Of a DNA stretch of 64,000 nt, positions 1 to 24,065 are shown piece after piece (within the stretch, counting starts at the first letter, position 1; the number at the start of each line of letters is the position of its first letter). The notes under the pieces are model-generated. The model made no database searches. It was not told the DNA's origin and saw only the letters and a program-made list of their open reading frames with translations. Both the position numbers and the translations under genes were made by a program. Source of the stretch: Octopus sinensis (Eukaryota); assembly GCF_006345805.1 (NCBI RefSeq), contig NC_043003.1, positions 75,516,001 through 75,580,000 of the forward strand, written 5' to 3'.

Positions 1-1394
1 TTCCGAATTCCGCAACATATCATCTATGATTGTTATTTGAATCATATACTTTCCCCCGTTTTCTTGTAGTTCCAACGTTTTCAAATTCTGAGATTCGTGT
101 TGTCATACGTAATCTTCGAGGATATTGAATAAATTCCGTCAGATTTTCATGCAATGAAAGTTAGATCCTTTCATTCATAACCATTTTATTTGGGAAGCAC
201 TAAACAAAACGATAGATTTGATACCACTAAATATCTTTGTTACAAGTATAAGGCTATTTACTATTACCGATATTTTCGTATACCCATTATAACTTCACCA
301 AATGAAAAGATGTGAAAACTATTTAAACATAAACATCTTTTTTTAAGTCGTATTTAAGTAAAAGTTTCTTGACAGATTTCGTTCAGCAATGAATCACAGT
401 CAATTCCTTTTCATATATTTATGTCAAGTCTAATTTTGTTTTTAATGGTGATAATATGGTTTTCTACTGTGTCTATATAAGCACATAATAATCTTTGCAG
501 TCAGAATAGTTAACCATTCCCTTTCACTGAAATAACTGTTACTTTAACTGATGCATGTAAAACAAATACAAGCAGCATGTAAATACACACACATTGCACT
601 AGACAAAAAGCATAACTTTAGCATTCATTCTCTCAGATTCAGTGCTCCTGTCTTCAAACAGGTTGAGTTTTGGTTATCTAGTGAGCTAGATCCGTTAACA
701 TCACACATTCCTATTTCCTTCAATTCGACTGAGCATGTGTTTATACGTGGCTCAGGAAACGTAAGAAACACGCATCACAACAAAGCATAAACAAAGCATC
801 GGCAGCAACTTTACACATTATAATCAAATCACATATTAATCATTTTGATTTCCCCAATGCACCTTCTCCTTCGTTCTTTCCATCTTCAATTAACCGTGAT
901 TATCTGCAAAGTAGAAGTACTACGGGAAAATGAAACTGTTAGTTAGAATCCACACTAATTGTGTTTGGATAATGAAGATCAATTCTATTAGATGCAGATG
1001 TGTCATATTCTACGATGTATAATGACATTCATTTAGATCTCAATTTATTTGAGAATTTGATAACGGCTTGTATTATGTGATTGTGGTCGAATTCCCAATT
1101 GCATTAACACAGTACGTTGGCCTACTCTGCCAGGAAAGGATATTTCATTATACTACATTAACGGAATTTTATATAATACACACTCACACAAAATTATATA
1201 GAGAAACATACACATTAACAAGCTTATATATGTATACGTATATACATATTAATATATAAGTATAAACATATTTTTATATACATAAGAATGTTATTTATTA
1301 TATTTATATGCATGTGCTTATGTGTGTGCGTGTGGTGGGGTTATATGTATGGACGTTCGTGGATCTATGTAAACAAGTATGCAAACAGGTCGCT

Positions 1395-1960
1395 CCTAAC
1401 GCACCGCCGATTTACAGATGACGTCGCACACATCGCCGAAAACCCAGATAGGCTACAAACCAATAGCAGAGCAGTCGGCGTTAAAATAAAGAACCTGAAA
1501 AAAAATTACCTGCGGTCCAAAGACATGACGCAAGGCTGAATACAGGTGAAAGTTCATGTTTTCGAGGAGGTTAATTGATACGTTATTGGGGGCACAAAGC
1601 ATATATATATGTCGGGATATGAACTCTGAAATCTTGAAGAGAACAAGAACAGAATAGAAGGAGGATACATCTATAAATGGTATGCTCGAAGTAAAATAGT
1701 AAAAGATCCTACGTACTAGTGCCGTCATTACGAATAAAACCTCTAGCTTTATATGCAACTGATACGTGGGCTACAAGGAGAAGGGAGGAATATTTATTGC
1801 CTGTGAGGCAAGCTAAAAATATCATTGCGGGAGCGCATCTGAAATGTGTTGGACTCGAGGATGAAGTGTGATTAACTACCTCATCATCATAGAATAACGA
1901 AAGACCATGTTTCACTGAACCTGGAATCTCGCAAGCTCCATAGACAACTGGAGGACGTGT
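1395..1960 (+). mobile_element. Degenerate RTE-like non-LTR RT fragment
   Basis: Frame of ORF 1288..1539 reads RRFTDDVAHIAENPDRLQ...SRAVGVKI, matching the RTE RT motif LRFADDIVL.AE...LQ...S..VGLKIN; LYATDTW near 1750 resembles LYG.ETW. Many stops and frameshifts. Confidence 0.45.
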
Positions 1961-4023
1961 CCAGTCTCAGTGTGTATGCAAGTGATAAGAAAAAGCTACT
2001 CAGCTAAACAACAGCACCATTATAAAATACCATTATAAAATAAGATATCAACTTCTTTGGTGGAAGGTGGGAAAAAATCTATGCATTTCTTGACGTTCTT
2101 TGCAGCCCGTGCGAATTTGATTGGTGTACCGGAACAAATCTTGTAAAAGAAATATATACTGTATAAAAATGTTATCGTTATGAAATTTTCCGTAAATTTC
2201 AGTATGGAAAAGTAATAGCCCCTCTTGGACTTTTACTCTGGATTCCATTTCGGTGCGAAAATTATGCATGGCTAGAAAATATTTTAGCAAGCTGCAACAG
2301 TTGCAAAGTACTTGGAGGTAGAAACAAGTAGTTGTTGTTCTCGACACCGCAAGATCGAGAAGGAAGTAAATCTTAGACGACTGATTTATTCCATGTTAAT
2401 GTCTGTTAGTATCAGGCATGTTAAAGAACACTCATAGTCTGAAACCCATTGCAATTATCATACAACACAGGAAATTTAATACATAGTGCATCTTGTAAAA
2501 ATGCATGCATCCCACAGGATAGCTAGGGAACACTGCAACCTGACTTAGTGTGTTTACACTTACTCCTATAAAGCTAAAACATTTCTCCGTGTCAAGATAG
2601 AGTAAATGGCTTTCTAACGGAGATTCAAATATGCCTCAGTCATTTTTGAACTGGTAACATGTTTATATATATATACGTCATAGCTTATATCTATTATTTA
2701 TTTCATTATGCCCGAACCGTTTACTAGCGCAATCAGTAGCAGTATACTGACTGGAATATAATAAGAAGAGAAAACTATCTCGGGTCAATCTCTTGCCTCT
2801 ACCCCTTCCATTGTCTGATGTTGAAGAGGAGATTACCACTCTGAAATGCATGCATGCATCCATCAGTCTGGTTAAGGGTTGCTTTGAGCTGATTTACTGT
2901 GTGTACAGTCTTGATCGGAAGCAAAACTAGAAATTTTTCCGTTCATTTGAGACCTTGCTCCAGCTAAGTCATTACAAGTATGCTTTAATCATTAATCATT
3001 CAGTCGAATGCTTCCACTCTATGAAATCCACCCTCTGAGCATCATTCAGCCCTCACTGGTTCAAATCTGAATATTAATCGCATTGTATCCCCTCCCCTAC
3101 CTATCATATCTTAGTGAAATGGAAACTTAATAAGACACGAAAAGCATAAAGAAATCAGTTATCTGTCACGAAAATAAAGTCGAAATCTTGCGAAACTATA
3201 TTTGGAACAGACTGTCAGACCAAAAGAAAACATACTCGGCTGCCTCTATGCTGGTTGTTGCATAGAAATTTTAATCGATACCAAGCATCCTTTACAATTT
3301 TAAACATTTCGAGATTGGAAGCTAAAACAACACCGGTTGGACTTGAACTTCAGATTTTATGACATGGAACTGTATATAGCAAAATATATGAACCGAAATG
3401 CTCACCAGTTTTACCAACATGAAATTAAATGAAACAAAGCAGCGTAATAATAAGATTTACAAAAAATAATATCCCAAAATAACTGTGGAATATGTTTGTC
3501 TCTTTCTAGAGGAGACTGAAGAGTGCAATGTAATTCATTTGATAACATAACAATGGCTTTTGTGCTGCCATTAAAAAAAGCGACCTGCTGCCATTGTTGG
3601 AGAATATTTTCTGCAGTAAATGTTGTAGCTGCCATTATTATTTGTTTTTTTTTCATTTTTTCCTTTTTTGTAAGTTGACATTGTTGTAATTATAATTCAT
3701 ATAATTACATCATCCTTTTGATTCAGCTGTTTATTCTAAGTGTATTCGTTTAGAAGTTTACTATTATGTCTGTATTTCTGTAAACATGTACTTCGCTATC
3801 TGTGTATACATGTACTTAGTCATTGTATATACATGCACTTAGTGATTTATTAACTTGGAGCATTTTGCACTCAGTGCATTTCAAACAAAGAGTTAAAACA
3901 AAACAAATAAAACATGATATACAGAATAAAGATATTCTGAAACGATATTTTAATGAAATATGAAATAGCCTATACAACTACTCAACACAGCCTCCATATC
4001 ACATTTTGCCTGAACTCCAAGTT

Positions 4024-4069
4024 CTAAACAATATTTGTTTGTAGATCTATGTCTATGCTGATATTATTA

Positions 4070-4124
<55 letters not shown>

Positions 4125-4271
4125 TGTTATTATTATCATTATTGTTATTATCATTATTATTATTATTGTTGTTGTTGTTGTTTTTGTTATTTTTGCTGTT
4201 GCTGTTGCTGTTGACGTTGTTGTTCGTGTTATTATTATTATTGTCATCATCATCATCCTCCCCATCATCAC

Positions 4272-4302
<31 letters not shown>

Positions 4303-4345
4303 TTCCTCATCATCTCCATCATCATCATCATAATTACTGATAATT
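4024..4345. repeat. Compound trinucleotide microsatellite (ATT)n/(GTT)n/(ATC)n
   Basis: Read directly; explains the poly-N/D, poly-L/S and poly-M/I pseudo-ORFs. Confidence 0.97.
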
Positions 4346-4548
4346 TCGATCAAAGCTATTCAAAGTATTTCAAAAGTTATAGGAAAATATCAAATATGAA
4401 TTATTAAGTTACTTTGCATCTAAATATTGAAGATTATAAATAAAATCCAGTGGGAATAAAGAAGCATTTATTTGCAGCCCTTCTAATCGCTCGGTATTCT
4501 TTTTTATTTTCAATTAAATATGTTCTAATATATAATAAATTCTGATAA

Positions 4549-17550: not shown

Positions 17551-18157
17551 TTCAAAATTTAAAAATAGGATAACATCTTCATAACAATTTATCAAGTAGT
17601 TAGCGGGAAAAAACATATAAGAGAAAAAATCCAACAATGTTTTCACTTAAATGTATTTATTTATATTATATAGAGGGCATTATTACACAAAAATGCCACA
17701 CGCTAGGAGGGACTCGTGAAATCAAAACTACTATCGCACCGAATGCAAACTGTTGAAGCCAGACATTTAAAAAAAGAATTTAGATATATATCACCTGTGA
17801 TTTCGTAATTAGTACAGTATTTTGTGATCTTTACTCCTCAGTAAAAGCATAATTCAAGATTTATAATGAATAAACAAAATCAACATGCCAGACGAACAAC
17901 TGTCGTATCCACCGTAGTATTAAGAACTGTTCACCCCTTATATCTCAATGTAAATGGCAGTCTTTTTCTAATTGCATTTCGGTAACAACGTGCTTATTGG
18001 GAATAGAAATTCAGTATTGAATATACTCCGGTTAAATTTATAATTTAAAAATAGGCTTAAAACGGCTTAAATTGTAATGGGACAGTAGATGGCATAAATG
18101 GCATGCGAGGAACGAAGACAATTATATACATATATATATATATATATATATTCATAT

Positions 18158-18209
<52 letters not shown>

Positions 18210-18263
18210 CTTAGAATAACTTAGAAAGGTTTTTGGCCAGTATTGGCCCAGGCCATGTCTAAC

Positions 18264-21200
18264 TTAATAGCACCACCTGGCGAAGTCTTTCAGTTCAGGA
18301 TTTGGGCACCAAGGCCCATTCGAGCAGAGAGTTATTGTTTGCAGAGACATATCCGGGTGTGGGTGGTTTGTCCGGTACTGTTTGAAGGAATTTGTCCAAA
18401 GACTTCTTGAATTTTGTGTGGTCAGTTTCTTTTTGACGTGTCCTGGTGTAATGTTGAAGAGAGCGGGTCCAATTGAGGTGAAATAGTTGTGCCGTATTGT
18501 CGTTATGTGATGCGATTTAGATTTTTGTTGTGGACGGATGGCACGTGGTCCAAGCCTTGGATGCATTTTGAAGGTGATGCCAACATCATTCGGACAGTGC
18601 TGATGGAATATTTTCCACATCATACAGATAATGTAGCGTTCACGGCGTCGTTGGAGTGAATACAATTTCAGCTTCTCTAGTCTACCCCAGTAGTCAAGGT
18701 CTGACATGCCATCTATCTTTTTTGTGATTGACCTTTGGGGAGCTTCAATTCTCATAATATTTTGTTTTGTGTAGGGAGACCACAGTGGACAGCAGTATTC
18801 AAGGTGGGGTCGGGCAAAAGTGGAGAAGAGAAGGATAATAGCGTGGGAATCTCTCGACTGGAAGGTTCTGAGAATCCAGGAACACATTCTGCGGGCCATG
18901 TCAACTTTGCTGCTTATATGTGTAGCCCAGCTTATGTTGTTGTCCACTGTTACTCCCAGGTCTCTGATGTTGTTGGATGCCATGAGAATTTCTCCAGAAG
19001 GAAGAGAGTATGGGAGTTTCAGAGCGTCCTCCCTTCCAAAGTGGATCAGTTCGAATTTGTCTTCATTTAGCAACATGTTATTCTTTTCCGCCCATTGGAC
19101 AACAGCCAGTAGGTCTGACTGAAGGTTTATTCGGTCATCCACGCCATTGATGACCTTCTGGAGCTTGGAATCATCAGCGAAGGTTCTGATGTTGCTGTGT
19201 TTGATGGTGTCAGTAATATCATTTATGTAGATGATGAAGAGAAGTGGGCCCAACACAGTGCCTTGTGGGACACCACTGCTGACTTTGGCTGGGCTGGATT
19301 TGACTCCTTCGACTACAACATGTTGGGTTCTGTTAGAGAGGAAGCACTTGATCCATTGCAGCAGCTTTCCAGTGACACCAATATTGGACAGCTTTCTCAG
19401 AAGGATCTTATGATCAACCCTGTCAAAGGCCTTGCTGAAATCAAGGTAGATGACATCAGTGTTGGAACCCTCTCCCAAGGCTCTCAAAATGTCATCAAAA
19501 TGATGCAGTAGCTGCGTCAGGCAATCTCTCCCATTACGGAATCCATGCTGGTTGGGGTTCAGCATATTATGACTCTCAAGGAAGTGAGTCATACGCGATC
19601 TCAGCACCCTCTCAAATACCTTGATGATATGAGAGGTGAGTGAGATTGGACGGTAATTCACGGCAAGCGATTTGTTTCCTTTTTTGAAAACTGGGACAAC
19701 AGACTGGGATAGAAGGTCTTCTGGTATATATCCAGCATCCAATGAGTTCCGCCACAGATTGGCTAGAGGGGGTGCAAGTTGGTTTTGACACATCTTCAAG
19801 ACACAAGCAGGGAACCTATCGGGACCTACTGCTGAATTATGCTTCATTTCCTTTATTGCTGCTAAGACATCAGGAGCGCCAAATGTTATGTCCGATAAAG
19901 TGTATTGGGGAGTAACATCACTGATACAGCCCAGATCAGTCATATCAGGATTGCTGAAAACAGAGCAATATTGTTTCTGCAATATTTCTCCCATGGTTTT
20001 GGCATTGTCTTGGAGAGTACCATTTTCATCAATCAGAGGGCCAACAGTAGAACCAGTGACTCTGTGTTTTTTTGCAAATGAAAAGAACACTTTGGGATTG
20101 AGTTTGATCTTCTCAATGGCCCAGGCCTCTTCAGCTCTTCGCTGACTATTGATGATAGACATCATGTTGTTTTGGAGTTTATGTTTTTTAATCTCTAGCG
20201 ACGAGATGGCAGTCAGGTTGGTGTGTTGCTGTTGACAGTATTTCAGCATGTTGATCTTTTTGTTGATTCTTTTAATTTTCCTTATGAGAGATTTTCTATT
20301 TCTAGGGATTCGACACTTAGATTTGTTTGCAGATCTTAATGGGGTGTGTCTTGCACATATGTTCGTAATGGTGTCTACAAGTGACTGCCAGGACTTTTTG
20401 ATGTTAGTGGGTGTGTATGTGTGCGTGAAGGACCAATCGACTTGTGCAAGATCATTATTGATCGCTTCCCAGTTTGCATTGTGGAAATCCATAGTGTCAA
20501 ATGGATGAGCAGGAGGGATGACATTTGTTTTGCATTTTGGCCAGTGAAATCTCAGATCACAGAGAACCATGTCATGGTCGGAGAGTAGGGTTTTCTCCAC
20601 TGCAATATTGTGGATAGTATCAGTGTGATTGCTGAAAATTAAGTCTAAGACGTTTTTGTGACATCTCGTTGGTTCGAGTACCAGTTGGGACAAGAAGAAG
20701 TCATCCATGAAGTCAAGAAGCGATTCCACTGCCTCCCTGTCAGGGGTTGAGAGAGAAGAACCTGGCGGCAGACTGTTTGTAGACCAGTCAACCCTGGGAA
20801 GGTTGAAATCTCCCATCATTAAAATGTTGTCAGGTTGACACTGCTGAATGAAACACTTTATGCTGTTGAGGCATTCCTTGAAGCATGGTAGGGGCGTTTG
20901 GGGTGGTCTGTAGAGCCCAACTACTGTTAAGTTGTTGGTTTGACTGAATACAGCAACTGCTTCGCAGTATCCATTCGAAAATATGTTCATGGCTTCTGTT
21001 GAGAATGAATCATGGACATAAATGGCAGTCCCACCCTTTCTTCTGCCAACACGATCAGCACGAATGGATTTGAAATTTTTAACTTTCACCTCGGCTTCCA
21101 AGTGGAGGTCACTAAGATGGGTTTCAGTGAGGACGAAGAAAGGGATGTGGTTTGGATGGGCCTCGACCCAGTCCTCCAGGAATCTTATCTTCCATTTTTG

Positions 21201-21311
21201 TGTATTGGTGGAAGGGCTGATGCCTTGGGCATTAAGCAGAAATGTTGAGGCGAGAGTGGATGGTTTTAATTGTTTTGGTGATTTGTTTATTTGATTGCTT
21301 TTTAATGGCAT
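18264..21311 (-). CDS. LINE ORF2: apurinic-like endonuclease plus reverse transcriptase; C-terminus frameshifted
   Basis: EN motifs LLNAQG, LTETHL, RADR..RKGGTAIYV, GLYRPP, MGDFNLP, LDLIFSN, SDH. RT motifs NYRPISLTS, QHGFR, YLDFSKAFDRVDH, GVPQGTVLGPLLF, FADDSK, LGV. C-terminal YSLQRRRERY. The authentic C-terminus appears to be in the alternative frame with stop at 18295-97. Confidence 0.95.
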   Translation of the reverse strand: MPLKSNQINKSPKQLKPSTLASTFLLNAQGISPSTNTQKWKIRFLEDWVEAHPNHIPFFVLTETHLSDLHLEAEVKVKNFKSIRADRVGRRKGGTAIYVHDSFSTEAMNIFSNGYCEAVAVFSQTNNLTVVGLYRPPQTPLPCFKECLNSIKCFIQQCQPDNILMMGDFNLPRVDWSTNSLPPGSSLSTPDREAVESLLDFMDDFFLSQLVLEPTRCHKNVLDLIFSNHTDTIHNIAVEKTLLSDHDMVLCDLRFHWPKCKTNVIPPAHPFDTMDFHNANWEAINNDLAQVDWSFTHTYTPTNIKKSWQSLVDTITNICARHTPLRSANKSKCRIPRNRKSLIRKIKRINKKINMLKYCQQQHTNLTAISSLEIKKHKLQNNMMSIINSQRRAEEAWAIEKIKLNPKVFFSFAKKHRVTGSTVGPLIDENGTLQDNAKTMGEILQKQYCSVFSNPDMTDLGCISDVTPQYTLSDITFGAPDVLAAIKEMKHNSAVGPDRFPACVLKMCQNQLAPPLANLWRNSLDAGYIPEDLLSQSVVPVFKKGNKSLAVNYRPISLTSHIIKVFERVLRSRMTHFLESHNMLNPNQHGFRNGRDCLTQLLHHFDDILRALGEGSNTDVIYLDFSKAFDRVDHKILLRKLSNIGVTGKLLQWIKCFLSNRTQHVVVEGVKSSPAKVSSGVPQGTVLGPLLFIIYINDITDTIKHSNIRTFADDSKLQKVINGVDDRINLQSDLLAVVQWAEKNNMLLNEDKFELIHFGREDALKLPYSLPSGEILMASNNIRDLGVTVDNNISWATHISSKVDMARRMCSWILRTFQSRDSHAIILLFSTFARPHLEYCCPLWSPYTKQNIMRIEAPQRSITKKIDGMSDLDYWGRLEKLKLYSLQRRRERYIICMMWKIFHQHCPNDVGITFKMHPRLGPRAIRPQQKSKSHHITTIRHNYFTSIGPALFNITPGHVKKKLTTQNSRSLWTNSFKQYRTNHPHPDMSLQTITLCSNGPWCPNPELKDFARWCY

Positions 21312-22528
21312 GTGTAGTGGGGTAATAGTGGTGGATGGCGGTGGGTGATAGCTCGGATGTTTTTTTCCAGTTCTTTTGCTAGATTCATTATAGCTAAAAA
21401 AGAGGAAGAAGAGGTGGTTTCCTGTCTAGGGAACCGCAGGTGACTGTGGCCGCGGCTATTTTTATGTGAGTGGTTATCTTTAAATGTCCGACGAGTCCCC
21501 GGGAGATGGGTAAAGGGGCAATCCCTGTGCAAGCACAATCTGTCTCGCTGGGAATAGCGGCAGATTTGGGGATTCCTTGTTTGAGATATTGGTGGTTGTG
21601 GTGATGTTGTATTATGGTGGTTGCTGTTGTAGTTTGTGGGGATAGAGCGTTTTGTTCCAGGTAAATGGGTGAATTTGCAGTCTCTATCAGTGCACAGTCT
21701 ATGGCGAAGAGAATATCGGCAAATGATGGGGTTTCGAGTGGGTGTGTAGGTGCGTGTGTGTGTGTGAGCTGTGAAAGGTGTAGATGATAGTTTGTTGAAG
21801 TTTTGGCGACCTTTGTGACCTGTAGGAGGTAAATTCCTTGAGATAGCATTAGTAGTAGTAGCTGTAGTAGTAGTAGTAGTAGTAGGTAGAAGAGATGTTG
21901 ACAGTGGTAATGATTGAGGAGGTCGATTCCAAGACAAAGATGTTTGTCGATATATAGTGGGAGTAGTACTAGTAGTAGTAAGCAGAGGAGATAGTGTTGA
22001 CAATGATGATGATTCAGCTGCTGGGGCAGTGAAAGGAAGAGGTGGTGCTTCCTGCTGTGTGACCCTGATGACTGGGGGGTCAATCGTTTCATTTAGCAAA
22101 TCAGCCATTGTAGATGAATCAAGGAGTGGTTCATCCTGTTGTTGTTGTTGAGGTTGTTGTTGCCTCTGAGGTTGTTGCTGCTGAAGTTGTTGTTGTTGCT
22201 GTAGCTGTTGTTGTTGTTGTTGCCGCTGAGTTTGTTGTTGTTGAGGTTGTTGTTGTTGTTGTTGCGCCGGTGATGCGTTCGAAGAGAAAACACATCTCAG
22301 TTTATCGAAGTGTTTATTTATTAATTTAAAAGCAACTTCGATTTGTTTTAATTTATTTTGGATCTGCTGTTCAGATCGAGTTTGCAAATGGTGAACTGTT
22401 CGTTTGGCAATTTCGTTCAGACACGAAGCACCTATGCTCTCTGTTTCGGTAAGGCCATGCCATGTGTTGATAAGAACGTCGACTTCATTATCAGACCAGT
22501 TTTTGTTGGATTTTTGGTGGCTAGCCAT
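21302..22528 (-). CDS. LINE ORF1: Myb/SANT(trihelix)-like domain, polyQ, S/T/P-rich linker, two CCCH-type zinc fingers
   Basis: 408-aa ORF with agaATGG start. N-terminus WSDNEVDVLINTW...EIAKR...RSEQQIQNKLKQIEVAFK; Q-rich aa ~89-131; fingers CRYSLRHRLCTDRDCKFTH (aa 270) and CRYSQRDRLCLHRDCPFTH (aa 323). Overlaps ORF2 by 10 nt. Confidence 0.9.
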   Translation of the reverse strand: MASHQKSNKNWSDNEVDVLINTWHGLTETESIGASCLNEIAKRTVHHLQTRSEQQIQNKLKQIEVAFKLINKHFDKLRCVFSSNASPAQQQQQQPQQQQTQRQQQQQQLQQQQQLQQQQPQRQQQPQQQQQDEPLLDSSTMADLLNETIDPPVIRVTQQEAPPLPFTAPAAESSSLSTLSPLLTTTSTTPTIYRQTSLSWNRPPQSLPLSTSLLPTTTTTTTATTTNAISRNLPPTGHKGRQNFNKLSSTPFTAHTHTRTYTPTRNPIICRYSLRHRLCTDRDCKFTHLPGTKRSIPTNYNSNHHNTTSPQPPISQTRNPQICRYSQRDRLCLHRDCPFTHLPGTRRTFKDNHSHKNSRGHSHLRFPRQETTSSSSFLAIMNLAKELEKNIRAITHRHPPLLPHYTCH

Positions 22529-22969
22529 TCTGGTTGATATGTTTTATTAAATTTTATTTTGTTCGTTCGTTTTGTTGATTACTTTTAATTATTATTATTA
22601 TTTTTTTTTTAAGGAGAAGTATGTAGAATTGATTGTACAGAATGTTTGTTGTAATACTGAGAAGTTTGTATTTGAATTATGAGCTTGTAGTTATTTTATC
22701 TTTCTTTTCTTTTTTTTTTTTTTTTTTTTTTTCCCCTCTTTTTCTAATTTTTAATGTGTGGGTGATCCTTTAGTTATCAGAAGGTGTTTGAAAATATTTG
22801 GTCGTTTGAAAATTATGAAAATAGTTTGTGGTTAAGGAAAAGTCTACTCACGAGTTGGGAAAAAGCGTGGTTTCAAATATACAGGAATATATGTGATGGT
22901 CAATTACGACGAATGTAGCTGTGAAGCTTGCTGCTGACCGGCATATATATATATATATATATGTATATA

Positions 22970-23013
<44 letters not shown>

Positions 23014-23019
23014 ATATAT

Positions 23020-23430
23020 GAAAAAACAAGTCAAAATAGAAAATGCTAAAATGATTTTATAAAGAACATTTCAGTACCGGTTTCGGTCATTTTGAGACCT
23101 TTTCAACTGTAACGATTAAATAATTAAATTTAGAAAAATTGAAAGAAAAGTTTTTTTAAAGGAATATTTATATAGTGTTCAAATATAAGTGGCATTCTGC
23201 CTTTCTCCGTCTCCCTTGTTTGCACTTGTGTGTTGGAGGTTGTGAATTCTTGGTAGGGTAGCAGAAGAAGAAGGTTGATAAGGAGAGGGGGTGGAAAAAT
23301 TTGGGAGTGCCTTGATGGTCGTATTTTGAATGGTCAATGGCGGCTAGCAGTTGCAGTTCAATTCAGAATATTTCTATTGAAAGGTTTGTTTATAGAATTT
23401 GCGTAGGTGTTATACTAAAAAGCATTAGTG
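23020..23430 (-). mobile_element. Penelope-like element pLTR/3' fragment
   Basis: Carries a minimal hammerhead motif of the PLE type, followed by a T-rich tail ending in (TA)n. Confidence 0.55.
23071..23110 (-). ncRNA. Minimal type I hammerhead ribozyme, U3:A8 covariant core
   Basis: Minus strand: CAG|UUGAAAA|GGUC-UCAAAAU-GACC|GAAA|CCGG-U-A/CUG. Stem I CAG/CUG, stem II 4 bp, palindromic stem III ACCGGU, GUA cleavage triplet. Confidence 0.75.
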
Positions 23431-23454
23431 ATAAAATTAAGAGGTAGAAGGTGG

Positions 23455-23642
23455 AGAAGAAGAAGAAGAGAAGAAGAAGAAGAAGGAGAAGGAGAAGGAG
23501 AAGAAGAAGATGATGATGATGGTGATGATGATGACGACGATGATGATGATAATGATGATGATGATGAAGAAGAAGAAGAAGAAGAAGAAGAGAAGAAGAA
23601 GAAGAAGAAGAAGAAGAAGAAGAAGAAGAAGAAAGAGAAGGG
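23455..23642. repeat. (GAA)n/(GAT)n compound microsatellite
   Basis: Read directly. Confidence 0.95.
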
Positions 23643-23959
23643 AGAATATAAATGGGTGAAAGTAGTGAGGTGTTGTATGACTTGAAGTTGGCACGTTATG
23701 GATTATAGCTGTGATTGGGACTGATTTGTAATGGATTCTTTGGAATGTAATATTTGTGTGTGTATTTCTTTTATTCTAAAGTTGAGGTGTATTAATCGTT
23801 TGTCGTAGACCCGTTAAGAAGTGGCCTGTATTTTGTAATAAAGAGAGTTTCTTTACTTATTCGTTGTCTCGTGGTTGTATCGTCCCTAAATTGGTAGAGA
23901 GGGAAAATCCTGAAGCCTGGTGTTTTGTTGATTAATATACCTCAACTTTAGAATAAAAG

Positions 23960-24065
23960 AAATACACTATATTAGAATATACCTGCCCAACGTGCCATGC
24001 AGTGGGATTGAAATTGGAACCATGTGGTTGAGAAGCAAACTTCCTGCAGCATAACCACACCTAAA
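23960..24065 (-). mobile_element. SINE family A 5' head fragment
   Basis: Reverse complement of ...ccacatggttccaatttcaatcccactgcatggcacgttgggcag, homologous to 51130/58420. Confidence 0.6.

What the first reader, a model, noticed from the sequence alone, without database searches (positions are those of the whole stretch)
21302..22528. LINE ORF1 with an unusual architecture: Myb/SANT(trihelix)-like domain, polyQ and tandem CX8CX4CX3H fingers
Seen: helix pattern W-S-D-N-E-V-D-V-L-I-N-T-W...EIAKR...RSEQQIQNKLKQIE.AFK (aa ~8-70); a ~43-aa Q-rich tract (22264-22136); an S/T/P-rich linker; and two 53-aa-spaced repeats TRNP.ICRYS.R.RLC..RDC.FTHLPGT. Established: catalogued LINE ORF1 types use RRM+CCHC, L1-type RRM, PHD or esterase domains, while trihelix/Myb-SANT domains are typical of Harbinger accessory proteins and transcription factors. 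Inference: a bifunctional ORF1p in which CCCH fingers bind the RNA, polyQ drives RNP condensation, and the Myb domain binds DNA and might steer an APE-type LINE to AT-rich or (TA)n sites. I do not recall this combination being described. It is the best candidate for a novel system in this window.
Basis: partly seen in the sequence, partly recalled or inferred. Interest (0 to 1): 0.75.

Follow-up and report, generated by a model that had tools for sequence, protein, structure and literature searches.

The report
Octopus LINE ORF1: Myb-like plus CCCH fingers
This is the first gene of an intact octopus jumping element (a CR1-like LINE), and its protein combines a Myb/SANT-like three-helix domain, a polyglutamine run and two CCCH RNA-binding zinc fingers, a domain mix that the ORF1 survey I read does not list and that arose by swapping the front half of an older PHD-plus-CCCH protein.

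Summary
Window 22528-21302 (minus strand) is an intact 408-aa ORF1. It overlaps by 10 nt an intact 1015-aa APE+RT ORF2. The element spans about 22942-18207, ends in (TTCTAAGTTA)x2, and abuts (TA)n on both sides.

The N-terminus (aa 9-82) hits Pfam Myb_DNA-bind_4 at the borderline: 27.7 bits against a cutoff of 27 when scanned alone. Three of five family members hit the same model, best E 6e-8. AlphaFold gives a three- to four-helix fold (pLDDT 75), but Foldseek finds no significant match.

The two C-x8-C-x4-C-x3-H fingers are real, and their ligands are invariant across 11 homologues.

The fingers are inherited. Sister LINEs (ORF2 38-47% identical) encode ORF1s with a helical region, PHD, three CCCH fingers and a C-terminal helix. 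The octopus lineage replaced the front half with a non-homologous Myb-like domain plus polyQ plus linker, lost fingers 1-2 and duplicated finger 3.

The same architecture recurs in four other loci, including Octopus vulgaris.

CCCH and Myb/SANT are absent from the 448-element ORF1 survey I read. Three of five copies abut TA-rich microsatellites. Steering by the Myb domain and condensation by polyQ remain untested.

Verdict: a new variant of a known kind, of moderate interest.

The parts
18207..22942 (-). Whole LINE copy, apparently full length: 5' UTR, ORF1, ORF2, short 3' UTR and tandem 10-mer tail
   Evidence: Ends read. The 5' terminal motif GTCAGCAGCAA recurs near the 5' ends of L005 and L004. 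Both ORFs are intact. No second copy is present in the window.
22529..22942 (-). 5' UTR, about 414 nt, A-rich, beginning GCCGGTCAGCAGCAAGC directly after (TA)n
   Evidence: It does not align reliably to the L005 5' region.
21302..22528 (-). ORF1, 408 aa, intact
22283..22504 (-). Myb/SANT-like helical domain (aa 9-82); pI about 8 here and 9.6-10 in relatives
   Evidence: Pfam Myb_DNA-bind_4. Family alignment A1 with invariant R51, Q55, I56, K59, I63, H73. AlphaFold helices at pLDDT 75.5. Foldseek not significant. pI values.
22136..22267 (-). Q-rich tract (aa 88-131)
   Evidence: A Q- or Q/P-rich run of very variable length follows the Myb-like domain in L004, L005, L006, L007 and L008. AlphaFold predicts a helix at 97-118.
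21743..22135 (-). T/S/P-rich linker, probably disordered (aa 132-262)
   Evidence: Composition. pLDDT is below 50 throughout.
21665..21721 (-). CCCH finger A, CRYSLRHRLCTDRDCKFTH (aa 270-288)
   Evidence: It aligns to the third CCCH finger of PHD-type ORF1 relatives, with P, C, C, C, H and R invariant.
21506..21562 (-). CCCH finger B, CRYSQRDRLCLHRDCPFTH (aa 323-341), a duplicate of finger A 53 aa downstream
   Evidence: 16 synonymous against 9 non-synonymous codon differences in the 33-codon core. Pfam Nab2-like zf-CCCH at aa 332-344, E 5e-3. Both copies are also seen in the O. vulgaris locus L008.
21335..21415 (-). Conserved C-terminal amphipathic helix SSFLAIMNLAKELEKNIRAI (aa 372-398)
   Evidence: Predicted helix 375-397. 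The SFL..L....E motif is shared by Myb-type and PHD-type relatives.
21302..21311 (-). ORF1/ORF2 overlap, ATGCCATTAA: the ORF2 ATG lies 10 nt before the end of the ORF1 stop codon
   Evidence: (junction sequence).
18264..21311 (-). ORF2, 1015 aa, apurinic-type endonuclease plus reverse transcriptase, intact (FADD motif present)
   Evidence: Pfam. Homologues are at most 47% identical. The NJ tree places it inside a clade of elements with PHD+CCCH ORF1s.
18207..18263 (-). 3' UTR, about 57 nt, ending in (TTCTAAGTTA)x2 at 18226-18207, with no poly(A)
   Evidence: Relatives end the same way: L001 (TCCAAGGTA)x2 and L002 (CCAAAGTAT)x2.
22943..23018 (.). (TA)n flank at the 5' junction
18130..18206 (.). 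(TA)n flank at the 3' junction. It is pure from 18166 and shares its last TA with the element tail.
   Evidence: (TA)n tracts of at least 12 nt cover only 2.2% of the window.

Best explanation
This ORF1 encodes the RNA-packaging protein of a young, apparently intact CR1-like (Jockey-superfamily) APE-type LINE of an octopod genome.

**Shown.** The protein is modular. It has a Myb/SANT-like helical domain, a variable polyQ run, a disordered T/S/P-rich linker, two CCCH fingers in a basic region (pI 10.5) and a conserved C-terminal helix. The C-terminal half is homologous to the ORF1 proteins of sister LINEs, which are built as helical region + PHD + three CCCH fingers + C-terminal helix. In the octopus lineage the front half, including the PHD and fingers 1-2, was replaced by a non-homologous Myb-like module. 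Finger 3 was duplicated.

**Inferred mechanism.**
- The CCCH fingers and surrounding basic residues bind the element's single-stranded RNA in cis. They do the job that CCHC knuckles or RRMs do in other ORF1 types.
- The C-terminal helix, and possibly the heptad-patterned helix 3 with the polyQ, mediate self-association or contact with ORF2p.
- The basic Myb-like domain replaces the PHD finger as the module that contacts chromatin or DNA at the target.
- ORF2 is translated from the overlapping ATG and carries out target-primed reverse transcription, preferentially at TA-rich microsatellites.
For: - Both ORFs are intact, with APE and RT domains in ORF2.
- Myb_DNA-bind_4 is the top and only consistent Pfam hit for 3 of 5 family members, with E from 3.7e-6 to 6.1e-8.
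- AlphaFold gives a helical bundle at pLDDT 75.5 and pTM 0.60.
- The domain is basic across the family, pI 8.0-10.0.
- The finger ligands P, C, C, C, H and R are invariant over 11 sequences.
- A profile of the relatives' three fingers hits only CCCH RNA-binding proteins in the PDB: ZC3H12A, CPSF30, MBNL and Nab2, best E 0.0096. Pfam zf-CCCH_2 hits 5 of 8 and zf-CCCH 4 of 8.
- The two fingers differ at 16 synonymous against 9 non-synonymous codons.
- The same architecture is found in L005 (ORF2 59-68% identical), L008 (O. vulgaris OX597814.1), L004 and L007.
- ORF2 lies within a clade whose five examined members (L001, L002, L003, L009, L010) all carry PHD+CCCH ORF1s.
- The Myb-like N-terminus is not homologous to the N-terminus of those relatives (hhalign probability 0.5%).
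- The 3' tail is a short tandem repeat, as in the relatives.
- TA-rich flanks are seen at both window junctions, in L007 ((AT)11, 5 nt before the ATG) and in L006.
Against: - The whole-protein Pfam score, 23.9 bits, is below the gathering cutoff of 27.
- Foldseek against the PDB gives no significant match (best E 2.3, TM about 0.4-0.6).
- A PDB profile search with the N-terminal family returns only weak GCN4-type coiled-coil hits.
- Only the first of the three Myb tryptophans is kept.
- All CCCH hits in Pfam are below the curated cutoffs.
- No binding activity has been tested.
- The full-length copy in L005 has no TA repeat at its 5' junction.
- 3' junctions other than the window's could not be examined.
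- The CR1-versus-L2 assignment rests on an unsupported NJ tree with a single bird sequence as anchor.
Confidence: 0.7

Rival explanations
1. The N-terminal region is mainly an oligomerisation module and not a DNA-binding Myb domain. Helix 3 and its extension, followed by the helical polyQ, would form a coiled coil that multimerises ORF1p, as the coiled coil does in L1 ORF1p. The Pfam Myb hit would then reflect only a generic helical pattern.
For: - The hydrophobic positions I56, L60, I63, F67, I70, F74, L77 and F81 follow a continuous 4-3 heptad spacing. They are conserved as hydrophobic in alignment A1.
- The best PDB profile hits for positions 50-84 are GCN4-type coiled-coil constructs, E 0.06-0.3.
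- AlphaFold makes the polyQ helical (aa 97-118).
- Foldseek gives no significant Myb match.
Against: - The conserved W-x3-E-x3-L-I helix 1 and helix 2 (..IAK..) lie outside any coiled coil. They match Myb_DNA-bind_4 profile positions 2-72.
- Three family members hit that Pfam model independently.
- AlphaFold folds the helices back on each other (pTM 0.60).
- The domain is basic.
- The two roles do not exclude each other.
Confidence: 0.2
2. The N-terminal domain is a SANT-type protein or histone-tail interaction module. On this reading it tethers the RNP to chromatin or to a host factor, functionally like the PHD finger it replaced, and has no sequence-specific DNA recognition. The TA-repeat preference would come from the ORF2 endonuclease and from microhomology with the ...GTTA 3' end.
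For: - It replaced a PHD finger, which is a histone reader, in an otherwise conserved ORF1 scaffold.
- The window copy's domain is only mildly basic (pI 8.0, net charge about +1).
- In APE-type LINEs target choice is normally set by the endonuclease (general knowledge).
- The element's tail ends in TA, which can pair with a nicked (TA)n.
Against: - Relatives' domains are clearly basic, pI 9.6-10.0.
- The matching Pfam family is annotated as a DNA-binding domain.
- PHD-type sister copies L001 and L002 show no TA repeat at their 3' junctions. The preference may therefore have appeared together with the Myb-like domain, though this rests on one or two copies per type.
Confidence: 0.25
3. The ORF is a decayed or accidental reading frame through low-complexity DNA, or a captured host exon, with no function in retrotransposition.
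For: - About 43% of the protein is polyQ or T/S/P-rich low complexity.
- A 232-aa ORF in another frame overlaps it.
- A word-based search of 5.8 billion proteins found nothing.
- Most related copies are frameshifted.
Against: - An exhaustive HMMER search found homologues of both ordered halves.
- The same order of modules lies directly upstream of LINE ORF2s in L004, L005 and L008.
- The finger ligands are invariant.
- The duplicated fingers show a synonymous excess.
- There is a 10-nt overlap with an intact ORF2.
Confidence: 0.03

Closest known systems
PHD-containing ORF1 proteins of CR1/L2-like LINEs (Type III of Khazina and Weichenrieder; subtypes IIIA/IIIB in Metcalfe and Casane 2014, PMC4120745)
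   Same: - Sister elements (ORF2 38-47% identical) carry PHD-type ORF1s.
- The window protein shares with them the third CCCH finger, the basic region and the C-terminal helix.
- It also shares the bicistronic layout and the short tandem-repeat 3' tail.
   Different: - The window ORF1 has no PHD finger and lacks CCCH fingers 1 and 2.
- Its N-terminal half is a non-homologous Myb/SANT-like domain plus polyQ plus linker.
- Finger 3 is duplicated.
- The survey does not mention the CCCH fingers of this family.
Myb_DNA-bind_4 (PF13837) domains: plant trihelix/GT factors, and the Myb-like accessory proteins of PIF/Harbinger transposons
   Same: - The profile match covers positions 2-72 of 89.
- It shows the W..E...LI helix 1 and the R-S-x2-Q-x3-K-L helix 3 signature.
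- A helical bundle is predicted.
- The Arabidopsis GT-1 domain (2jmw) appears among the Foldseek hits, though not significantly.
   Different: - The score is borderline.
- The second and third conserved tryptophans are replaced by Leu and Leu/Phe.
- The domain sits in a LINE ORF1, not in a transcription factor or a DNA-transposon protein.
- No close relatives outside the LINE family were found among 1.84 billion cluster representatives.
Myb domains used for target recognition in other non-LTR elements: the N-terminal ZF+Myb of R2, and the Myb-like region in TRAS1 ORF2 (from my own knowledge; R2 Myb is also discussed in PMC5678591 and PMC6895275, listed)
   Same: A Myb-type helical domain encoded by a non-LTR retrotransposon, possibly associated with insertion into a repeated target.
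   Different: - In those elements the Myb domain is part of the RT-containing protein. In R2 it goes with a restriction-like endonuclease.
- Here it is in the separate ORF1 protein of an APE-type element.
- DNA binding is unproven here.
CCCH (C-x7-8-C-x4-5-C-x3-H) RNA-binding fingers of CPSF30/CPSF4, MBNL, ZC3H12A and Nab2
   Same: - The ligand spacing is identical.
- CPSF30 finger CYFYSKFGECSNKECPFLH aligns with the family consensus CRYSLKKRLCLNEDCKFVH.
- The fingers occur in tandem.
   Different: - E-values are weak, as is usual for 20-residue fingers.
- The host proteins are cellular RNA-processing factors, not transposon proteins.
- RNA binding has not been tested.
L1-type ORF1p (coiled coil + RRM + CTD) and Jockey-type ORF1p (RRM + CCHC knuckles)
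   Same: The presumed role is the same: to coat the element's RNA in cis and to oligomerise.
   Different: - No RRM, CTD or Transposase_22 hit was found.
- There is no C-x2-C-x4-H-x4-C knuckle. The protein has only nine cysteines, six of them in the two CCCH fingers.

Membership tests
APE-type LINE (non-LTR retrotransposon) | ORF2 with an apurinic-like endonuclease followed by a reverse transcriptase | tested here: met
   Exo_endo_phos_2 E 3.1e-14 at aa 129-249; RVT_1 E 1.6e-30 at aa 545-788.
APE-type LINE (non-LTR retrotransposon) | ORF1 directly upstream on the same strand, with no LTRs or TIRs | tested here: met
   ORF1 and ORF2 overlap by 10 nt. The ends carry no repeats other than the flanking (TA)n.
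CR1-like / Jockey superfamily | 3' end is a short tandem repeat and not poly(A) | tested here: met
   (TTCTAAGTTA)x2 at 18226-18207. Relatives have (TCCAAGGTA)x2 and (CCAAAGTAT)x2.
CR1-like / Jockey superfamily | RT phylogeny places it in a named clade (RTclass1 or Repbase reference set) | tested here: inconclusive
   No reference set was available. An NJ tree without support values puts its clade next to a group that contains a bird (Grus japonensis) sequence, and away from RNase H-bearing I-like hits.
Myb_DNA-bind_4 (PF13837) | Score at or above Pfam's gathering cutoff (27 bits) | tested here: inconclusive
   Whole protein 23.9 bits, below the cutoff. Domain alone 27.7 bits, just above it. 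Three of five family members hit, best E 6.1e-8.
Myb_DNA-bind_4 (PF13837) | Three-helix Myb/SANT fold | tested here: inconclusive
   AlphaFold gives helices 13-29, 35-45 and 53-72 (plus 74-81) at pLDDT 75.5 and pTM 0.60 from a four-sequence alignment. Foldseek's best E is 2.3; the hits are homeodomains, GT-1 (rank 10) and the ZZZ3 Myb-like domain (rank 14).
Myb_DNA-bind_4 (PF13837) | DNA binding | not testable with these tools
   Only indirect evidence: the domain has pI 8.0-10.0 across the family.
CCCH zinc finger | C-x7-8-C-x4-5-C-x3-H ligand spacing, with ligands conserved in homologues | tested here: met
   Two C-x8-C-x4-C-x3-H motifs. C, C, C and H are invariant in 11 sequences.
CCCH zinc finger | Profile match to known CCCH families | tested here: inconclusive
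   All matches are below the curated cutoffs. Window: Nab2-like zf-CCCH, E 5e-3. Relatives: zf-CCCH_2 in 5 of 8 (best E 3.7e-5) and zf-CCCH in 4 of 8. All 12 PDB profile hits are CCCH proteins, best E 0.0096.
PHD-type (Type III) ORF1p | PHD finger present | tested here: not met
   No PHD hit and no Cys/His cluster in aa 1-265 of the window ORF1. PHD is present in relatives: L002 at 26.1 bits, L003 and P0075 weaker.
Jockey-type (Type I) ORF1p | RRM followed by CCHC knuckles | tested here: not met
   No RRM or zf-CCHC hit. No C-x2-C-x4-H-x4-C motif in the sequence.
L1-type (Type II) ORF1p | Coiled coil + RRM + CTD (Transposase_22) | tested here: not met
   No Transposase_22 hit. An ORF1 of that type is seen in L011, a different lineage.

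The most novel reading that the evidence does not exclude
In this octopus LINE lineage the ORF1 protein, not only the ORF2 endonuclease, helps choose the integration site. On this reading, a Myb-like DNA-binding domain acquired in place of a PHD histone reader directs the RNP to (TA)n microsatellites. The whole ORF1 cassette can also be exchanged between unrelated LINE lineages; locus L004 has a Myb-type ORF1 upstream of an L2-like ORF2. This would be a case of retargeting an APE-type LINE by swapping one ORF1 domain.
Probability: 0.15. Interest if true: 0.75.

Novelty: new variant of a known kind. Interest (0 to 1): 0.5.

Why it matters
LINE ORF1 proteins are the least understood part of the most abundant animal transposons. 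Known types are built from RRM, CCHC, coiled-coil/CTD, PHD or esterase modules.

This locus adds two modules, tandem CCCH fingers and a Myb/SANT-like domain. It also shows the swap directly: the same C-terminal scaffold carries PHD in sister elements and a Myb-like domain in octopus. That gives a natural pair for testing what the N-terminal reader module of an ORF1 protein does. The candidate roles are chromatin tethering, target choice and oligomerisation.

It also bears on octopus genomes, where LINE activity has been linked to genome expansion and brain expression (PMC9115989). That study examined RTE and Dong elements, not this family.

If the link to TA repeats holds, it would be a new microsatellite-targeting lineage among APE-type LINEs.

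Tried and rejected
- **Whole-ORF1 word-indexed search:** no hit. I suspect the 8000 candidates were mostly polyQ matches.
- **Exact-sequence lookup of ORF1:** not on record. The source genome's copy is not in the protein collection, and the best ORF2 hit is only 47% identical.
- **PDB sequence search with whole ORF1:** only polyQ-type and other chance-level matches.
- **Single-sequence AlphaFold of the whole protein:** uninformative, pLDDT 40.7.
- **PDB profile search with the N-terminal family:** only weak coiled-coil matches.
- **Profile search of the 5.8-billion-protein set with the N-terminal alignment:** returned only the three members already known.
- **JGI metagenome scan with the N-terminal alignment:** nothing.
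- **Aligning the 5' UTR with L005:** not reliable.
- **Further copies or fragments in the window:** none found.
- **Literature searches:** terms for Myb or CCCH combined with LINE ORF1 found no description of this architecture. Kapitonov and Jurka 2003 on PHD and esterase in CR1-like elements is not held.
- **Homology between the Myb-like N-terminus and the relatives' N-terminal helical region:** rejected, hhalign probability 0.5%.
- **dN/dS between copies:** not attempted. The nearest copy (L005) is only about 35-40% identical in ORF1 and is frameshifted, so synonymous sites are saturated.
Full report
**1. The observation**

The minus strand of window 22528-21302 is a 408-codon ORF running from ATG to TAA.
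- The N-terminal pattern NWSDNEVDVLINTW...EIAKR...RSEQQIQNKLKQIEVAFK lies at aa 10-68.
- A Q-rich tract covers aa 88-131 (22267-22136).
- A linker at aa 132-262 contains 30 T, 16 S and 16 P in 131 residues.
- Two C-x8-C-x4-C-x3-H motifs lie at aa 270-288 and 323-341, 53 residues apart, inside repeated TRNP.ICRYS.R.RLC..RDC.FTHLPGT.R units.

The ORF2 ATG lies 10 nt before the end of the ORF1 stop codon (ATGCCATTAA). ORF2 (21311-18264, 1015 aa) has an endonuclease (Exo_endo_phos_2, E 3e-14) and a reverse transcriptase (RVT_1, E 1.6e-30).

**2. The element**

Reading outward, the copy runs from about 22942 to 18207.
- It begins GCCGGTCAGCAGCAAGC. A GTCAGCAGCAA-like motif also lies near the 5' ends of related loci L005 and L004.
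- A 57-nt 3' UTR ends in (TTCTAAGTTA)x2, with no poly(A).
- Relatives end in the same way: (TCCAAGGTA)x2 in L001 and (CCAAAGTAT)x2 in L002. This is the CR1/L2 style of 3' end.
- Both junctions abut (TA)n, at 22943-23018 and 18206-18130. Tracts of at least 12 nt cover only 2.2% of the window.
- No other copy or fragment is in the window.

**3. Relatives of ORF2 and their ORF1s**

The best ORF2 homologues are only 47% identical. Most come from ENA assemblies, and the two whose record names I saw are labelled as metagenomes. The five neighbours I could fetch are L001, L002, L003, L009 and L010. Their ORF2s are 38-47% identical to the window's and to one another. All five carry an upstream ORF1.

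These ORF1s share one plan:
- a helical N-terminal region;
- a PHD finger (Pfam PHD at 26.1 bits in L002, weaker in L003 and P0075);
- three CCCH fingers;
- a C-terminal amphipathic helix with the motif SFL..L....E.

In an NJ tree the window ORF2 sits inside this clade, next to P0001-P0003. The neighbouring clade contains a bird (Grus japonensis) sequence. RNase H-bearing hits lie further away. I therefore call the element CR1-like within the Jockey superfamily. The clade is not settled, because no reference set was available and the tree has no support values.

**3a. The C-terminal half of the window ORF1 is inherited**

An exhaustive HMMER search of 1.84 billion cluster representatives found 13 hits. 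The hits to aa 255-408 include PHD-type ORF1s (P0071, P0075, P0076). Their third finger, LCRYS(L/V)..RLCTN..C.(F/Y).HLKGTKR, aligns with the window fingers. P, C, C, C, H and R are invariant across 11 sequences.

A profile of the three-finger region hits only CCCH RNA-binding proteins in the PDB: ZC3H12A, CPSF30/CPSF4, MBNL1/2 and Nab2. The best E is 0.0096. CPSF30's CYFYSKFGECSNKECPFLH aligns with finger 3. In Pfam, zf-CCCH_2 hits 5 of 8 members and zf-CCCH hits 4 of 8. All of these are below the curated cutoffs, as is usual for such short domains.

Within the window, the two finger units differ at 16 synonymous but only 9 non-synonymous codons out of 33. The duplication is therefore old, and both copies have been kept under constraint.

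**3b. The N-terminal half is a different, acquired module**

The hits to aa 3-114 are short ORFs: P0068, P0069, P0072, and P0070 from Octopus vulgaris.

Alignment A1 shows a conserved W-S-x2-E-(V/I)-D-x-L-I-N helix, an IAK helix and an N-R-S-x2-Q-I-x-N-K-L-K-x-I helix.

Pfam evidence:
- Myb_DNA-bind_4 is the only consistent hit.
- The whole protein scores 23.9 bits, below the cutoff of 27.
- The domain alone scores 27.7 bits.
- Three of five members hit, with a best E of 6.1e-8.

Structure evidence:
- AlphaFold with a four-sequence alignment gives helices 13-29, 35-45, 53-72 and 74-81, at pLDDT 75.5 and pTM 0.60.
- Foldseek against the PDB has no significant match, with a best E of 2.3. The list is mostly helical DNA-binding domains: homeodomains at the top, Arabidopsis GT-1 at rank 10 and the ZZZ3 Myb-like domain at rank 14.

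Other observations:
- The domain is basic in the family, pI 8.0-10.0.
- It is not homologous to the N-terminal helical region of the PHD-type relatives (hhalign probability 0.5%).
- Helix 3 and its extension carry a conserved 4-3 hydrophobic spacing (I56, L60, I63, F67, I70, F74, L77, F81). They give weak GCN4-type coiled-coil matches. A role in oligomerisation is therefore a serious rival or an additional function.

**3c. The architecture recurs**

- **L005** (an ENA metagenome scaffold) has an ORF2 59-68% identical to the window's. Its frameshifted ORF1 has the Myb-like domain, a Q-rich run, one intact finger, one decayed finger and the C-terminal helix.
- **L008** (O. vulgaris chromosome OX597814.1) holds a decayed copy with the Myb-like domain, a Q/P run, a T-rich linker, both fingers and the C-terminal helix. 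These are followed by ORF2 residues 9-154 at 73% identity.
- **L007** and **L006** are 5'-truncated copies.

The Q-rich run always follows the Myb-like domain. Its length ranges from about 5 to 44 residues.

**3d. A possible ORF1 exchange**

L004 carries a Myb-type ORF1 whose C-terminal half is 47% identical to that of L005. It has an intact finger, CRYSLRERICLQQDCTFTH. The ORF2 that follows within about 150 nt is only about 25% identical to the window's. It clusters with P0040 and P0042.

P0040's own contig (L011) has a coiled-coil + RRM ORF1 and a PHD finger at the ORF2 N-terminus. That layout matches the Tnp22 + PHD layout listed for L2 subgroup 5 by Metcalfe and Casane.

L004 is therefore either a recombinant element, a nested insertion or a chimeric contig. 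I could not tell which.

**3e. Target sites**

| Copy | 5' junction |
|---|---|
| Window | (TA)n, also at the 3' junction |
| L007 | (AT)11, 5 nt before the ATG |
| L006 | TGTATA-rich repeat, about 55 nt before the ATG |
| L004 | CA/TA-rich low-complexity sequence |
| L005 | No repeat |

The truncation points differ between copies, so the repeats belong to the target and not to the element. PHD-type L001 and L002 show no TA repeat after their tails.

This suggests a preference for TA-rich microsatellites. The sample is small. Short-read contigs also tend to break at microsatellites, which may bias which junctions are seen.

**4. Mechanism**

Shown:
- a modular ORF1;
- homology of its C-terminal half to PHD+CCCH ORF1s;
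- replacement of its N-terminal half;
- constraint on the fingers.

Inferred:
- The CCCH fingers and the basic C-terminal region (pI 10.5) bind the element's RNA.
- The C-terminal helix, and perhaps helix 3 with the polyQ, self-associate.
- The Myb-like domain takes over from the PHD finger as the chromatin or DNA contact.

The endonuclease, together with the TA-ending tail, could explain the TA preference without the Myb domain.

**5. Comparison with what is known**

The survey of 448 Jockey-superfamily ORF1s lists PHD, RRM, CCHC, Tnp22, esterase, leucine zipper and one unspecified zinc finger. It has no occurrence of CCCH, Myb or SANT. It does document domain shuffling and probable ORF1 transfer between lineages, which is the process seen here.

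My searches of the held literature found no description of a Myb-type or CCCH-type LINE ORF1. The octopus LINE study covers RTE and Dong elements. I could not check Repbase or Dfam. The 2003 Kapitonov and Jurka paper is not held.

From my own knowledge, Myb domains are used for target binding in R2 (N-terminus of the single ORF) and in TRAS1 (within ORF2), and HeT-A Gag localises to telomeres. An element-encoded Myb domain and ORF1-directed targeting each have precedents. Their combination in an APE-type LINE ORF1 has none that I know of.

**6. Verdict**

This is a real, well-defined feature: a new ORF1 variant of a known kind of element, with a clear evolutionary origin by module swap. The functional reading is open. 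Interest is moderate (0.5).

Noticed in passing
L004:354-4563: A Myb-type ORF1, frameshifted but with an intact CCCH finger and 47% identical to the L005 ORF1 C-terminal half, lies directly upstream of an ORF2. That ORF2 is only about 25% identical to the window's and clusters with L2-like hits P0040 and P0042. This is either ORF1 exchange between LINE lineages, a nested insertion or a chimeric contig.
   Followed up: partly
L001:497-1837, L002:346-2496, L003:150-1865, L009:424-1794, L010:137-1396: Sister LINEs encode ORF1s built as helical region + PHD + three tandem CCCH fingers + C-terminal helix. The 2014 survey of Jockey-superfamily ORF1s does not mention the CCCH fingers. They may be an unrecognised part of its 'PHD-only' types.
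   Followed up: partly
window 22943-23018 and 18130-18206; L007:1-22; L006:1-30: Copies of the family abut (TA)n or TA-rich microsatellites at junctions with different 5' truncation points. This suggests a preference for TA-repeat targets. L005 is an exception.
   Followed up: partly
window 23760-23797 and 23930-23967: A 38-nt inverted repeat, 97% complementary with a 132-nt spacer, lies about 800 nt beyond the LINE's 5' end. It looks like a small MITE or hairpin element.
   Followed up: no
window 23428-23694: A GAA/GAT/GAG trinucleotide microsatellite produces spurious 85-aa ORFs on both strands: an E/D/K-rich one on the plus strand and an L/F/I-rich one on the minus strand.
   Followed up: no
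window 21394-22092 (minus strand): A 232-aa ORF in a second frame lies inside ORF1. It is rich in L, H and Q and results from the low-complexity CAA/ACA-rich coding sequence. I do not consider it a gene.
   Followed up: no
L011:2-673 and 1104-4475: A related but distinct LINE has a coiled-coil + RRM (L1/Tnp22-like) ORF1 and a PHD-like finger at the N-terminus of ORF2. This matches the Tnp22 + PHD layout listed for L2 subgroup 5 in Metcalfe and Casane.
   Followed up: no
L008:7240-7400: Upstream of the decayed O. vulgaris copy is a stretch that looked to me like a SINE, following a TA/TG microsatellite. I did not analyse it, so the 5' boundary of that copy could not be placed.
   Followed up: no
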